From the IMG/VR virus record IMGVR_UViG_3300027933_000045, positions 1 to 8,512 of that record: 8,512 bases of DNA. One strand, written 5' to 3'. The notes beneath the pieces are model-generated. The model did no database searches. It was not told the DNA's origin and saw only the letters and a list, made by a program, of their open reading frames with translations. Positions 3,264 through 8,455 of this stretch are shown one piece after another. The stretch's first letter is position 1; every line of letters begins with the position of its first letter. A program made the position numbers and the translations under genes.

Positions 3264-3554
3264 TTAACTTATTTGGAAGAATATAGATCTTATTATTTTA
3301 GCAATTTTAATATTATACTTTCTAGATAGTTCTTCTAATTTTTGGTAATATAGCTCATCTACCGTAAAAAATACTCTTTCGTCATAAATTTCTCTACTTT
3401 CCATTTCTCTAAAGTCTTTTTGTTGATTTAATATTTTGTCTATCTCTTGCTTTATTAGCTCACGTTTTTCATAAAAAAGATTTTTATACTTTGCGGGTAT
3501 TCTAAGTTCTATATACTTATTTTTTTGTTTCTTCATACTTTTCTCTTCTTTCAT
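3264..3554 (-). CDS. Basic 96-aa protein with RHH-like C-terminal domain (possibly tandem RHH)
   Basis: RVFFTVDELYYQKLEELSRKYNIKIAKIIRSIF fits the RHH pattern. The N-terminal KYIELRIPAKYK resembles a second ribbon. Confidence 0.65.
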   Translation of the reverse strand: MKEEKSMKKQKNKYIELRIPAKYKNLFYEKRELIKQEIDKILNQQKDFREMESREIYDERVFFTVDELYYQKLEELSRKYNIKIAKIIRSIFFQIS

Positions 3555-3576
3555 CTACAATATAAACGTTCCATAT

Positions 3577-3589
3577 ACATTTAAATGTC
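3577..3589. promoter_or_regulatory. Palindromic bidirectional TATA (rep / 96-aa gene)
   Basis: ACATTTAAATGT is a perfect 12-bp palindrome. TTTAAA lies 23 nt from rep ATG and 26 nt from the opposite ATG. GTC follows on the rep side. Confidence 0.6.
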
Positions 3590-3607
3590 AGGTTTTCATT
3601 TGAGGCT

Positions 3608-3955
3608 ATGGACTATGAAAAAGTTTTTAGCTTTCACTTTCTTTACGTTTATACTTATTTTATTACGATCGCAACAAATTATCGATATAATTCAGTTACT
3701 CCAATTTTTCAAAGATTTAAAAAATATGCTTATGGACATGATAAAAATTCACATATTTTTTCAGTTAAGGAATATACAACTAAGGCACATGGCTTACATT
3801 ATCATATTTTATATTTTACTAATAAAAAATTGGATTATTCTAGAGTTCATGAGAAAATGCCAAAACATTCAGATATCAGAATTCAATTAGTTCCAAAAAC
3901 AAAAAGTGACATAAAAAAAGTTTTTACTTATATGTTAAAAAATCAAATTACTTAA
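3608..3955 (+). CDS. rep: HUH-superfamily Rep endonuclease (SIRV ORF119-like replication initiator)
   Basis: Motif I-like YFITI, E..T...GLHYHIL (HUH motif II) and YMLK (YxxK motif III). About 115 aa, divergent from the SSB cluster as in rudiviruses. Confidence 0.9.
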   Translation: MDYEKVFSFHFLYVYTYFITIATNYRYNSVTPIFQRFKKYAYGHDKNSHIFSVKEYTTKAHGLHYHILYFTNKKLDYSRVHEKMPKHSDIRIQLVPKTKSDIKKVFTYMLKNQIT

Positions 3956-3956
3956 A

Positions 3957-4253
3957 TTATTTAGTTTGTTGAGTTTGCTGATTTTGATGTTGTTCAACTT
4001 TTTTCTGTGCTAAACTATTAACATCTCTTAATGTATCCATATTCAATAATGCATTAACACCAAGAGTTGTAGTATCTTTAATTGATTCAACTGCTGAAAT
4101 TGTAGATTTTGTCATTTGATCAATTGCTATTTGAAATGATTGATTTGCCTGTTTTTGATTGTATAAATGTACTACTTCTCCAACTACATAACTTGCAATT
4201 AATATGCCCATTAATGTTAGAAATCCTTCTAGTGCCACTGTTTCTAGGCTCAT
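3957..4253 (-). CDS. PVAP: virus-associated pyramid (egress/lysis) protein, SIRV2 P98 / STIV C92 family
   Basis: 98 aa with one N-terminal TM helix, then GEVVHLYNQKQ...AIDQMTKST...ESIKDTTTLGVNALLNMDTLRDVNSLA, recognisable as the SIRV P98 sequence. Confidence 0.92.
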   Translation of the reverse strand: MSLETVALEGFLTLMGILIASYVVGEVVHLYNQKQANQSFQIAIDQMTKSTISAVESIKDTTTLGVNALLNMDTLRDVNSLAQKKVEQHQNQQTQQTK

Positions 4254-4307
4254 ACTAATTCTATTTTTAGAAAGATGGTCAATAATAAACTTTTCTCAAA
4301 AAATCAA

Positions 4308-4333
4308 AATATATAAATATGTCATAATATTCA
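4308..4333 (+). promoter_or_regulatory. svtR promoter (TATA+GTC) with adjacent AATATTCA
   Basis: AATATATAAATATGTCATAATATTCA. Confidence 0.7.
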
Positions 4334-4351
4334 TTTGATGAATGAGGAAAA

Positions 4352-4513
4352 ATGGCAGAAAAGTTAAAAAGTCAAAAAGTAGTTTTTGGAATTAACATAA
4401 ATAAGGAATTAAAGTTGAAGTTGAAGAAATATTGTGTTGAGCAGGATAAAACGCTAACTGAGGCTATAGAAGAGGCAATTGTTGAATATCTGCAGAAAAG
4501 GGGAGTTAAATAA
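4352..4513 (+). CDS. svtR: SvtR-like ribbon-helix-helix transcriptional repressor, 53 aa
   Basis: Manual translation MAEKLKSQKVVFGININKELKLKLKKYCVEQDKTLTEAIEEAIVEYLQKRGVK resembles SIRV1 ORF56b (VFGI...LK.YC......LT.AIEEAI.EYLQKR). SD GAGG at 4344-4347, TATA+GTC at 4312-4323. Below the ORF-track cutoff. Confidence 0.88.
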   Translation: MAEKLKSQKVVFGININKELKLKLKKYCVEQDKTLTEAIEEAIVEYLQKRGVK

Positions 4514-4555
4514 AAATACTGAGAAAGTTTTTGAATTGAATAAAAAAACTCTTTT

Positions 4556-5444: not shown

Positions 5445-5686
5445 CATGTCTTTCTTTTCAATATTTCAATTTCTAGTTTAAGTTCATCAATCTCATCATA
5501 AATATCAGCAAAAATATCATAAATTACAGTATATAAAAATGCAAAAATTCCAGATGCAAAAATTACTACTATTACAATATCTAACATATTTTTTGTTAGA
5601 ATTCCTAATGATAAAATTATTAAAGCTAAAAATGTAAAAAATAGAAAAAATAAGAAGAGTAATATTCTCCAAAAATCTCTATCCAT
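5444..5686 (-). CDS. Two-TM membrane protein with acidic coiled-coil tail, 80 aa
   Basis: Two long hydrophobic stretches, then DIYDEIDELKLEIEILKRK. TATA+GTC promoter at 5715-5727. Confidence 0.7.
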   Translation of the reverse strand: MDRDFWRILLFLFFLFFTFLALIILSLGILTKNMLDIVIVVIFASGIFAFLYTVIYDIFADIYDEIDELKLEIEILKRKT

Positions 5687-6907: not shown

Positions 6908-7072
6908 CTATTCTTCATATTTTGTTTCAACATATTCATAAGTTTTACTACTTATTCTTTTCATATTTCTCATTCTTACATTTGGGTGATGTTTTTTCAA
7001 ATGATAATTTGCATTTCTCCAAGTTTTGAATATTCTATTACAAACTGGACATTCGTATAGGAAGAGACCCAT
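6908..7072 (-). CDS. C2H2 zinc-finger protein, 54 aa (start revised from 7135 to 7072)
   Basis: YECPVCNRIFKTWRNANYHLKKHH is a canonical C2H2 finger. ATG at 7072 lies 23 nt from the minus-strand TATA at 7095-7102 and avoids overlap with the glycosyltransferase. Confidence 0.82.
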   Translation of the reverse strand: MGLFLYECPVCNRIFKTWRNANYHLKKHHPNVRMRNMKRISSKTYEYVETKYEE

Positions 7073-7077
7073 GAGAC

Positions 7078-7102
7078 TTTTTAATGTCATGACGTTTAAA
7101 AA
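7078..7102. promoter_or_regulatory. Interlocked divergent promoters sharing GTCATGAC
   Basis: TTTTTAA-T-GTCATGAC-G-TTTAAAAA. Each strand reads TATA-N-GTC with an ATG 23-25 nt downstream. Confidence 0.72.
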
Positions 7103-7108
7103 TTCTTC

Positions 7109-8140
7109 ATGGAAGTGTCGAACACAGTTCGCCACAAAACCGTAATTTTAACTATGAATTATTCTTCTATCCGAAATATTTCGGATGATATAGCCCAAGT
7201 CCTTAGAAAAAATGGTGAAATTGTCACAATTTCAACAAATCCGTATTTAATTCCACAATCTGATAAATTAATAATATTTATGCCGTTTCATCCCCCATCA
7301 TTAAATCCATATCTTTATACTTTTAGAGAATTTAAAGGAAAGAAGTACTTTTATACTACTTGTGATGGCACACCGAACTTAGAAATTGTTAATAAGTACT
7401 TATTAGAAAATATAACATTTATTCCAAATTCAAAGTTTACGGCTAAAAATTTACAAGAAGTTGGCCTACAAATTGATCTTCCAGTTTTCCACGGTTTAAA
7501 TTTTGAAATTGTAGAAAAAGCTGATAAATTAGCTATTCAGATGAAAGAAAAAATAGACAAAGATTTTCCTAGTTCCATAAAATTCGGAATAGTTTCAGGT
7601 TTGACAAAAAGAAAAAATATGGATTTGATGCTTAAGGTCTTTCAGGAAATAAATACTAAAATTCCAGAATTGGCCAAAAAAGTTCACTTTTTCGTTATTT
7701 CTCATAAGGACTTTAAGAATTATGAAGTTCCCGAAAATGTGCATTTTGTTAGTGAATTTGGTCTAAATCCCAGAGAATACATTTTCGCTTTCTATAAAAC
7801 TATGGATTTTGTTATTGTCCCTTCAGGAACTGAAGGATTCGGAATGCCGGTTCTAGAAAGCATGGCCATGGGAACTCCAGTCATTCATCAACTTATGCCC
7901 CCATTTGATGAATTTACATCTTGGCAATGGAACCTTTTGATTAAGTCTTCAGAAATTGAGGAATATTATGATAAAACTCATGGTCAAAAATGGAAAATTC
8001 ATAAGTTTGATATTCAAGATATGATAAATGCAATTATGATAGCAAACGAATTAAAAGATAAAGATGAAAGAAATAAGAATTTAAGAGAATTAGCTAAAAG
8101 ATATGATATTGAAAATTTATATGTTAGATTTTTAGAATGA
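7109..8140 (+). CDS. GT-B (GT4-like) glycosyltransferase, SIRV ORF335-like
   Basis: RKNMD and PSGTEGFGMPVLESMAMGTPVI (E-x7-E GT4 motif). Position next to the MCP gene as in rudiviruses. Confidence 0.93.
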   Translation: MEVSNTVRHKTVILTMNYSSIRNISDDIAQVLRKNGEIVTISTNPYLIPQSDKLIIFMPFHPPSLNPYLYTFREFKGKKYFYTTCDGTPNLEIVNKYLLENITFIPNSKFTAKNLQEVGLQIDLPVFHGLNFEIVEKADKLAIQMKEKIDKDFPSSIKFGIVSGLTKRKNMDLMLKVFQEINTKIPELAKKVHFFVISHKDFKNYEVPENVHFVSEFGLNPREYIFAFYKTMDFVIVPSGTEGFGMPVLESMAMGTPVIHQLMPPFDEFTSWQWNLLIKSSEIEEYYDKTHGQKWKIHKFDIQDMINAIMIANELKDKDERNKNLRELAKRYDIENLYVRFLE

Positions 8141-8405: not shown

Positions 8406-8455
8406 TAAATCAAAAAATTTATGTATGTCATAATATATATAACGATTGTGAGATC

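What the first reader, a model, noticed from the sequence alone, without database searches (positions are those of the whole stretch)
3957..4513. Pyramid lysis gene PVAP head-to-head with the SvtR repressor: candidate lysis-timing switch
Seen: PVAP (-) and an unannotated svtR (+) diverge across a 98-bp gap holding both TATA boxes about 20-25 nt apart. PVAP also ends 1 nt from the convergent rep stop, with no room for a terminator. Knowledge: PVAP alone builds the seven-sided egress pyramids. SvtR is an autorepressing RHH reported to repress late genes. In SIRV1/2, as I recall, svtR neighbours rep while P98 lies far away. Inference: here the lysis gene sits between rep and svtR, so one operator region could couple SvtR autoregulation to egress, and rep read-through could act as antisense to PVAP.
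Basis: partly seen in the sequence, partly recalled or inferred. Interest (0 to 1): 0.7.

Follow-up and report, generated by a model that had tools for sequence, protein, structure and literature searches.

The report
Rudivirus pyramid gene beside SvtR repressor
The archaeal virus's cell-opening "pyramid" gene does sit back-to-back with a small repressor gene, but this is the normal layout of a whole genus of Yellowstone rod-shaped viruses, and the sequence gives no sign that the repressor controls lysis.

Summary
The stops of rep and PVAP lie 1 nt apart, and the 98-bp gap holds two back-to-back BRE/TATA promoters.

The layout is not special to this contig (IMGVR_UViG_3300027933_000045). The same 1-nt and 98-bp geometry occurs in the nine Yellowstone isolates examined (SIRV4, 7-11, V3, V60, V65). 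It also occurs in about 30 metagenomic relatives.

Joining the flanks of a roughly 361-bp PVAP cassette recreates the continuous rep-svtR junction of SIRV2. The cassette is bounded by an 11-nt exact (18/21) direct repeat. PVAP's BRE/TATA matches that of SIRV2, where svtR lies 23 kb away. So PVAP moved as a module with its own promoter.

The probable SvtR autoregulatory site is a palindrome at 4329-4343. It occupies the position of the SIRV1 site, on the side of the svtR TATA box away from PVAP.

Several results argue against a shared operator:
- The two variable flanks show no covariation.
- SIRV4 combines different flank types.
- Five natural variants carry two genes between PVAP and svtR.

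Oligo-T termination signals lie inside both converging genes. Coupling by SvtR spreading remains possible but is unsupported. Interest is low to moderate.

The parts
3608..3955 (+). rep, the HUH replication initiator (homologue of SIRV1 ORF119). The HYH motif and Tyr108 are retained.
   Evidence: PDB 2X3G at E=5.8e-47. PF21578 at 1.9e-44 and PF23343 at 2e-6.
3937..3957 (.). Left copy of the imperfect direct repeat (AAAAAATCAAATTACTTAAAT). It covers the last rep codons and the stop.
   Evidence: the repeat finder family D1, 18/21 identity and 11 nt exact, spacing 361. The repeat is present in the window, L019, L020 and partly in V3, V65, SIRV11 and others.
3957..4253 (-). PVAP, the pyramid-forming egress protein. 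It is 98 aa with an N-terminal membrane segment.
   Evidence: phrog_8367 at 1.4e-53. tblastn hits to SIRV ORF98 and STIV C92. Hydropathy profile.
3913..3942 (-). Oligo-T runs on the PVAP strand (T6 at 3942-3937, T7 at 3919-3913). These are the likely archaeal termination signals for PVAP, embedded in the antisense of rep's Lys codons.
   Evidence: The T7 run is present in all 28 sequences scanned (27 relatives plus the window); the proximal run is conserved in most of them. The termination function is inferred.
3999..4004 (+). T6 run on the rep strand, 43 nt past the PVAP stop. It is the likely rep terminator, inside the variable C-terminal tail of PVAP.
   Evidence: Present in about two thirds of relatives and absent in 8 of 28.
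4259..4272 (.). A/T-rich palindrome TTCTA-TTTT-TAGAA over the predicted PVAP transcription start and short leader.
   Evidence: It is not conserved in SIRV4 or L016, which carry the same SvtR type.
4280..4297 (-). PVAP core promoter. TATA is TTTATTATTG (4289-4280) and BRE is GAGAAAAG (4297-4290). The predicted start is near 4258, giving a near-leaderless mRNA.
   Evidence: TAATAA at 4283-4288 is invariant in 29 sequences. The 17-mer is 14/17 identical to the SIRV2 ORF98 upstream region at the same distance, P about 0.004.
4298..4318 (.). Right copy of the direct repeat. It covers the BRE/TATA region of the svtR promoter.
   Evidence: It aligns with the 3' end of SIRV2 rep.
4310..4328 (+). svtR core promoter: the TATA box TATATAAA followed by the rudiviral TGTCATAAT element.
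   Evidence: This is the most conserved stretch of the 700-nt region, with top-base frequency 0.94-0.99. It is homologous to SIRV1 'promoter 56', which is active in vitro (PMC1635249). The motif recurs at many rudiviral promoters.
4329..4343 (.). Palindrome ATTCAT-TTG-ATGAAT, the candidate SvtR autoregulatory operator over the predicted svtR transcription start.
   Evidence: It occupies the position of the SIRV1 site ATAATTCAAAATCTTAAAATG. The stretch is hypervariable between relatives. The palindrome was found.
4352..4513 (+). svtR, a ribbon-helix-helix repressor of 53 aa.
   Evidence: PF21432 at 1e-9. PDB 2KEL at 7e-13.

Best explanation
This is the ordinary rep / PVAP / svtR block of a Usarudivirus-type genome, the Yellowstone clade of Sulfolobus islandicus rod-shaped viruses.

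The block arose when a minimal PVAP module was placed into the ancestral rep-svtR junction. The module consists of the ORF plus about 44 bp carrying its own BRE/TATA. It landed just upstream of the svtR TATA box, duplicating about 11-21 bp of that junction. This event explains two features. The two stop codons are 1 nt apart because the present rep stop lies in the duplicated copy. The two core promoters abut back-to-back in a gap fixed at 98 bp.

The two promoters most likely work as separate units:
- PVAP is transcribed from its own TATA box (4289-4280) as a near-leaderless mRNA. It ends at T-runs inside the rep 3' end.
- svtR is transcribed from the canonical rudiviral TATA+GTC promoter (4310-4328). 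SvtR represses it by binding the palindrome at 4329-4343 over its own transcription start.

Shown here: gene identities, geometry, conservation, synteny and the empty-site match.

Inferred: transcription starts, terminators, operator identity and the independence of the two promoters.
For: - Identical geometry (1 nt, 98 bp) in SIRV4, 7, 8, 9, 10, 11 and V3, V60, V65.
- The same geometry in about 30 IMG/VR contigs, with no indel in the gap across 29 distinct sequences.
- SIRV1/2 have rep followed by svtR with the svtR TATA box inside the rep 3' end.
- The window with 3948-4308 removed aligns colinearly with SIRV2. Identity is 77% over 157 nt and 34/39 at the junction. The score is 176 against 125 for the unjoined control.
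- A direct repeat flanks the cassette.
- The PVAP BRE/TATA is conserved with SIRV2, where it is far from svtR.
- The svtR promoter fragment of SIRV1 is an autonomous promoter in vitro (PMC1635249).
- The only exact genome-wide match in SIRV1 to the published SvtR consensus (with 4 rather than 5 unspecified bases) lies between the svtR TATA box and the ATG. The window carries a perfect 6+6 palindrome at that position.
- There is no covariation between the PVAP-side and svtR-side variable stretches.
- Natural variants have 2 genes between PVAP and svtR, with the svtR-type promoter duplicated.
- T-runs follow the stop codons on both strands.
Against: - The 11-nt exact repeat is not significant on its own. 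In Markov simulations, 28% contain a repeat at least as long. The case for insertion rests on its position and on the empty-site alignment.
- Outgroups (SBRV1, SRV) do not show which arrangement is ancestral.
- A second TTCnn...nnGAA palindrome (4259-4272) sits at the mirror position on the PVAP side. Only 3 such palindromes occur in the 8.5-kb window. This is what a two-operator design would look like.
- SvtR is reported to repress SIRV1 gp30 from a site about 80 nt away (PMC5569661). A 50-bp distance therefore does not rule out an effect on PVAP.
- No transcription start, 3' end or binding data exist for any usarudivirus in the material I could read.
- The primary SvtR paper (Guilliere 2009) was not available.
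Confidence: 0.62

Rival explanations
1. Shared control. SvtR bound at its own operator spreads across the 98-bp region, or also binds the PVAP-side palindrome at 4259-4272. It would then repress PVAP together with svtR and tie pyramid production to the SvtR level.
For: - The two core promoters abut, with 20 bp between the TATA boxes.
- Similar TTC...GAA palindromes lie over both predicted transcription starts. Two of the three such palindromes in the window are here.
- SvtR is proposed to polymerise along DNA and to act over about 80 nt at gp30. The related AvtR protects about 100 nt spanning two promoters (PMC5569661).
- The gap length is strictly constant.
Against: - The PVAP-side palindrome is lost in SIRV4 (L015) and L016, which encode the same SvtR type.
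- There is no k-mer covariation between the two sides (P=0.58 and 0.70).
- Five relatives separate the two genes by 1.1-1.5 kb.
- The PVAP promoter is conserved in SIRV2 far from svtR.
- No SvtR-consensus match lies near SIRV1 ORF98.
- An autorepressor holds its own level steady, so it is a poor timer.
- PVAP transcripts are reported to rise steadily, and the opening trigger is not transcriptional (PMC4456609).
Confidence: 0.18
2. Promoter interference without SvtR. The two abutting TBP/TFB complexes compete or cooperate, so firing of one promoter influences the other.
For: The BRE/TATA of PVAP (4280-4297) and the BRE/TATA of svtR (about 4303-4317) are separated by about 5 bp. The spacing is invariant in 29 sequences. 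In the variant loci the PVAP promoter still keeps a divergent svtR-like TATA partner.
Against: There is no direct evidence. Constant spacing is also expected from simple purifying selection on two packed promoters. In SIRV2 the PVAP promoter works without this partner.
Confidence: 0.1
3. Antisense control. rep transcripts read through into PVAP, or PVAP transcripts into rep, and modulate the partner mRNA.
For: The stops are 1 nt apart in every relative. Eight of 28 relatives lack a T5+ run on the rep strand within 150 nt. The predicted 3' ends overlap by about 60-90 nt in the window.
Against: The window has a T6 run 43 nt past the PVAP stop, and very T-rich sequence immediately after the rep stop. 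PVAP has conserved T6 and T7 runs. The overlap covers only the variable Q/K-rich tail of PVAP (93-99 aa in relatives). The 1-nt spacing is explained by the insertion geometry.
Confidence: 0.1

Closest known systems
Usarudivirus isolates SIRV4-SIRV11 and V3/V60/V65 (Yellowstone; Bautista et al. 2017, PMC5454432)
   Same: The gene order is the same: RHH, rep, PVAP, svtR. The 1-nt stop spacing and 98-bp gap are the same, and the promoter core is nearly identical. PVAP is 82-94% identical and SvtR 66-94% identical.
   Different: The window is only about 79% identical at the DNA level. It lacks the second small RHH ORF that overlaps the svtR stop in those isolates. Its operator palindrome is perfect, whereas it is imperfect in SIRV7.
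Icerudivirus SIRV1/SIRV2 rep-svtR operon-like pair and 'promoter 56' (Kessler 2006, PMC1635249; SvtR reviewed in PMC5569661)
   Same: The rep and svtR genes are homologous. The svtR TATA+GTC promoter and the position of the SvtR site between the TATA box and the ATG are also homologous.
   Different: In SIRV1/2 no gene lies between rep and svtR, and PVAP is about 23 kb away near the right end. The centre of the operator has diverged, with 11/21 identical positions.
AvtR of Acidianus filamentous virus 6, which acts on the gp29 and gp30 promoters
   Same: It is a viral RHH regulator whose footprint spans about 100 nt and two neighbouring promoters. It regulates its own gene and its neighbour (PMC5569661).
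   Different: AvtR is a tandem-RHH monomer from a different family. Its neighbour is another regulator, not a lysis gene. No binding data exist for the window.
Phage P22 immI region (Arc/Mnt RHH repressors at the divergent Pant/Pmnt promoters). This comparison rests on established knowledge and was not tested here.
   Same: Small RHH repressors sit at compact divergent promoters and autoregulate.
   Different: It is a bacterial sigma-70 system with a defined operator overlapping both promoters. Here the only candidate operator with homology support overlaps one promoter only.

Membership tests
PVAP (SIRV2 P98 / STIV C92 pyramid-forming protein) | Sequence homology to P98/C92 over the whole roughly 90-100 aa protein | tested here: met
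   phrog_8367 at 1.4e-53 covering 1-96 of 96. It is 70% identical to SIRV1/2 ORF98 and 62% identical to STIV C92.
PVAP (SIRV2 P98 / STIV C92 pyramid-forming protein) | N-terminal hydrophobic membrane segment without a signal peptide | tested here: met
   Kyte-Doolittle 19-residue windows score 1.3-2.0 over residues 1-32. Absence of a signal peptide was not tested separately.
PVAP (SIRV2 P98 / STIV C92 pyramid-forming protein) | Self-assembly into seven-sided pyramids in membranes | not testable with these tools
   This needs expression and electron microscopy. The property is reported for SIRV2 and STIV (PMC4456609).
SvtR / 56B ribbon-helix-helix repressors | RHH domain homologous to SIRV1 gp08 (PDB 2KEL) | tested here: met
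   PF21432 at 1e-9, above its curated cut-off. 2KEL at 7e-13 over residues 5-51.
SvtR / 56B ribbon-helix-helix repressors | Binds and represses its own promoter | tested here: inconclusive
   A perfect 6+6 palindrome (4329-4343) lies at the position of the SIRV1 site over the predicted transcription start. There is no binding assay.
SvtR / 56B ribbon-helix-helix repressors | Represses a late structural gene (gp30/ORF1070) | not tested
   The homologue lies outside the window. In SIRV7 no copy of its own operator motif was found upstream of ORF36.
Rudiviral Rep (SIRV1 ORF119, HUH superfamily) | Homology to ORF119 with the HUH motif and active-site tyrosine | tested here: met
   2X3G at 5.8e-47. 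HYH and Tyr108 align. That Tyr108 is the catalytic residue is from memory of Oke et al. 2011.
Single-operator bidirectional switch (one repressor site controlling both divergent promoters) | The operator overlaps both core promoters, or matched operators sit at both | tested here: not met
   The homology-supported site lies downstream of the svtR TATA box only. The PVAP-side palindrome is not conserved with the SvtR type, and there is no covariation.
Single-operator bidirectional switch (one repressor site controlling both divergent promoters) | Adjacency of the two genes maintained wherever both occur | tested here: not met
   SIRV1/2/3 keep the two genes about 23 kb apart. Five usarudivirus-like contigs have 1.1-1.5 kb between them.

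The most novel reading that the evidence does not exclude
In the Yellowstone clade, moving PVAP next to svtR placed the egress gene under SvtR. The repressor would bind its hypervariable operator over the svtR start, then spread or bind the mirror palindrome at 4259-4272. That would shut both divergent promoters, giving these viruses a repressor-gated control of pyramid production that Icelandic rudiviruses lack.
Probability: 0.15. Interest if true: 0.6.

Novelty: new member of a known kind. Interest (0 to 1): 0.27.

Why it matters
What decides when an archaeal virus opens its host is unknown. A repressor wired to the pyramid gene would have been a first handle on that question. The evidence instead points to a genus-typical gene order produced by relocating a self-contained promoter-plus-gene module.

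Two by-products are modestly useful. First, the breakpoints of the PVAP relocation between Icelandic and Yellowstone rudiviruses can be mapped precisely. A second, independent insertion is bounded by the same roughly 20-bp svtR promoter sequence. This hints that promoter sequences serve as recombination junctions in these genomes. Second, a hypervariable stretch lies exactly where SvtR binds in SIRV1. It is a good candidate for repressor-operator co-divergence and is easy to test by EMSA.

Tried and rejected
- The published SvtR consensus ATnnTTCAAnAnnnnnAAAATG gave only a 3-mismatch hit in the gap (4332-4353, minus strand). It has no match with 1 or fewer mismatches even in SIRV1. A version with four n's matches exactly once, at the SIRV1 svtR promoter, so I used position rather than motif.\n- The Sta1 consensus ATNT-N8-WNAT is too degenerate to be informative, with 82 hits against 68 expected.\n- I searched SIRV7 for further copies of its own operator, for example upstream of the gp30 homologue. 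Nothing exceeded chance, with 5 hits against 4.4 expected.\n- The near-copy of the operator inside PVAP (4112-4124) is explained by the conserved Asp-Gln-Met codons. It also occurs in SIRV2 and SIRV7.\n- A global alignment of the PVAP upstream regions of the window and SIRV1/2 was not significant. Only the BRE/TATA 17-mer is.\n- The direct repeat taken alone is not significant.\n- The outgroups SBRV1 and SRV did not show which arrangement is ancestral.\n- Rfam found no RNA family in the window.\n- Guilliere 2009, Okutan 2013 and Quax 2013 are not held in the library. Kessler 2004 did not turn up in a search. Mapped SIRV transcription starts and the four SvtR targets could therefore not be read directly.

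Full report
**What is there.** The window is the IMG/VR contig IMGVR_UViG_3300027933_000045. It is a rudivirus fragment about 79% identical in DNA to the Yellowstone isolates SIRV4-11 of the genus Usarudivirus.

The three genes in the finding are real and correctly named.
- rep (3608-3955, +) matches the solved SIRV1 ORF119 Rep at E=5.8e-47, with the HYH motif and Tyr108 aligned.
- The 98-aa ORF at 3957-4253 (-) matches the PHROG 'pyramid forming protein' at 1.4e-53. It is 70% identical to SIRV1/2 ORF98 and has an N-terminal hydrophobic segment.
- The 53-aa ORF at 4352-4513 (+) is a 56B-type ribbon-helix-helix protein matching SvtR (PDB 2KEL) at 7e-13.

The rep and PVAP stop codons are separated by one base (3956). 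The divergent gap 4254-4351 is 98 bp.

**Is the arrangement special?** No. The same order, the same 1-nt stop spacing and the same 98-bp gap occur in SIRV4, 7, 8, 9, 10, 11 and in isolates V3, V60 and V65. They also occur in about 30 further hot-spring contigs in IMG/VR. In an alignment of 29 distinct sequences the gap has no insertion or deletion.

There rep is followed by svtR on the same strand after 24 bp, and ORF98 lies about 23 kb away near the right end. Bautista et al. 2017 had already noted that core genes outside the structural block are syntenic among Yellowstone SIRVs but rearranged relative to Icelandic ones (PMC5454432).

**How the arrangement arose.** In SIRV1/2 the svtR TATA box lies inside the last codons of rep. 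In the window an imperfect direct repeat brackets a 361-bp segment. The repeat is 11 nt exact and 18/21 overall, at 3937-3957 and 4298-4318. The segment holds the PVAP ORF and about 44 bp upstream of it.

Joining the flanks in a script gives a sequence colinear with the SIRV2 rep-svtR junction. Identity is 77% over 157 nt and 34/39 across the junction. The alignment score is 176, against 125 for the unjoined control. The present rep stop codon falls in the left repeat copy, at the place of the TAA in the TATA box of the right copy. This accounts for the 1-nt stop spacing without invoking selection.

The 11-nt repeat alone is not statistically remarkable, since 28% of simulations contain one at least as long. 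The argument therefore rests on its position and on the empty-site match. The outgroups SBRV1 and SRV do not settle which state is ancestral.

The PVAP BRE/TATA 17-mer (reverse complement of 4281-4297) is 14/17 identical to the sequence at nearly the same distance (a 2-nt offset) upstream of SIRV2 ORF98, with P about 0.004. PVAP therefore carries its own core promoter wherever it sits.

**Anatomy of the 98-bp gap.** Conservation across 29 sequences picks out two elements.
- TAATAA (4283-4288) is invariant. On the minus strand it belongs to TTTATTATTG, preceded by the purine-rich GAGAAAAG. This is the PVAP TATA/BRE.
- ATATAAAT-n-TGTCATAA (4311-4327) is invariant and is the most conserved stretch of the whole 700-nt region. 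This is the svtR promoter.

Using the usual Sulfolobus spacing of about 26 nt from the TATA centre (established knowledge), the PVAP start falls near 4258, giving a leader of about 5 nt. The svtR start falls near 4340, giving a leader of about 12 nt that holds a conserved GAGG.

The TGTCATAAT element is not specific to svtR. It follows TATA boxes at many gene starts in SIRV1 and SIRV7, and once more in the window at 8426. The homologous SIRV1 fragment, 'promoter 56' (5547-5679), is an autonomous promoter in vitro and is stimulated by the host factor Sta1 (PMC1635249).

**Where SvtR probably binds.** I could not read the primary SvtR paper. A review gives a putative consensus and states three things (PMC5569661). 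SvtR represses its own promoter. It represses gp30 from a site about 80 nt away. It may polymerise along DNA.

In SIRV1 the printed 22-nt consensus has no match with 1 or fewer mismatches. The same consensus with four unspecified bases matches exactly once in the genome. That match is at 5576-5596, between the svtR TATA box and the start codon.

The window's homologous 21 nt are 4324-4344. Their ends are conserved and their centre has diverged. They contain a perfect palindrome, ATTCAT-TTG-ATGAAT, at 4329-4343 over the predicted svtR start. This stretch is the most variable part of the gap. Its variants tend to go with particular SvtR beta-strand variants, but the match is not strict and physical linkage would explain it.

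The candidate operator therefore sits on the far side of the svtR TATA box, about 50 bp from the PVAP TATA box.

**Tests of the coupling idea.** One point favours it. A second palindrome of similar form, TTCTA-TTTT-TAGAA (4259-4272), lies over the predicted PVAP start. Only three TTCnn...nnGAA palindromes occur in the whole window. This pattern was defined after seeing the data.

Several points count against it.
- The PVAP-side palindrome is absent in SIRV4 (L015) and L016, which encode the same SvtR type. SIRV4 combines the window's svtR-side type with the other PVAP-side type.
- Shared 5-mers and 6-mers between the two variable stretches of the same genome are no more frequent than between shuffled pairs (P=0.58 and 0.70).
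- Five relatives (L027, L030, L039, L041, L045) carry two unknown genes between PVAP and svtR. There the PVAP promoter keeps a divergent TATA partner, and svtR has its own second copy of the promoter.
- No consensus-like site lies near SIRV1 ORF98.
- A review states that PVAP transcripts rise steadily through infection, that pyramid formation is gradual, and that the trigger for opening is unknown (PMC4456609). An autorepressor also holds its own level steady rather than timing an event.

**The convergent end.** Archaeal termination uses oligo-T tracts (established knowledge), so no intergenic space is needed. On the PVAP strand a T6 run and a T7 run follow the stop at +15 and +38 (3942-3937 and 3919-3913). 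They are made by Lys codons of rep on the other strand. The T7 run is present in all 28 sequences scanned. On the rep strand a T6 run lies at 3999-4004, 43 nt past the PVAP stop. It is present in about two thirds of relatives.

The predicted overlap of the two mRNAs is therefore about 60-90 nt. It is confined to the variable Q/K-rich tail of PVAP, which varies between 93 and 99 aa in relatives. Other convergent junctions in the window have gaps of 42 and 46 nt with T-runs on both strands. An antisense effect is possible but has no specific support.

**Verdict.** The synteny contrast with SIRV1/2 is real but already present in published, annotated genomes. The 'lysis-timing switch' is not supported by any test I could run, although spreading of SvtR across the gap is not excluded.

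The most likely account is an autonomous PVAP module relocated into the rep-svtR junction, leaving two independent back-to-back promoters and an svtR-only operator (confidence about 0.6).

Noticed in passing
window 4320-4328 and 8426-8434; L060 (SIRV7) and L013 (SIRV1), many sites: TGTCATAAT directly after a TATA box recurs upstream of many rudiviral genes. It looks like a virus-wide promoter element. The PVAP promoter lacks it.
   Followed up: partly
window 3264-3554 (-) and 3608 (+), gap 3555-3607: A second RHH gene (96 aa, PF12651, phrog_11115) is head-to-head with rep across only 53 bp. rep too has a divergent regulator as its neighbour.
   Followed up: no
window 4514-4555, compared with L001 2086-2244 (SIRV7 ORF13): SIRV4-11 have a second small CopG-type RHH ORF (48-52 aa) overlapping the svtR stop. 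SIRV9 gp19 is treated as an aCcr1 cell-cycle regulator homologue in PMC9976892. The window lacks this ORF, so svtR is monocistronic here.
   Followed up: partly
L039 1116-2479; L030 1418-2337; L027 1128-2407: Five IMG/VR relatives have two genes of unknown function between PVAP and svtR. One is 240-264 aa and the other is a 188-aa multi-pass membrane protein, truncated to 64 aa in L030. Neither has a Pfam hit. The insertion is bounded by duplicated copies of the svtR BRE/TATA sequence (AAAAAATCnAnATATAT).
   Followed up: partly
window 4112-4124: TCATTTGATCAAT inside PVAP is 12/13 identical to the candidate operator at 4331-4343. It encodes the conserved Asp-Gln-Met and is also present in SIRV2 and SIRV7, so it is probably coincidental.
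   Followed up: yes
L002 4369-6509 (SIRV2), compared with L060 27740-29868 (SIRV7): The amino-acid permease and tRNA-guanine transglycosylase genes lie next to svtR in SIRV1/2 but near the right end in SIRV7. This is the converse of the PVAP position and suggests an exchange between the genome arms.
   Followed up: no
window, whole length: Matches to the degenerate SvtR consensus with 3 or fewer mismatches are twice the shuffled expectation (22 against 11.5; 0 of 200 shuffles reach 22). This is probably a composition or strand effect, but it is unexplained.
   Followed up: no
window 6908-7135 (-) and 7109-8140 (+): As called, the divergent ORFs overlap by 27 nt at their 5' ends (a zinc-finger-like 75-aa ORF with a GTG start, and the glycosyltransferase). 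One start codon is probably miscalled.
   Followed up: no
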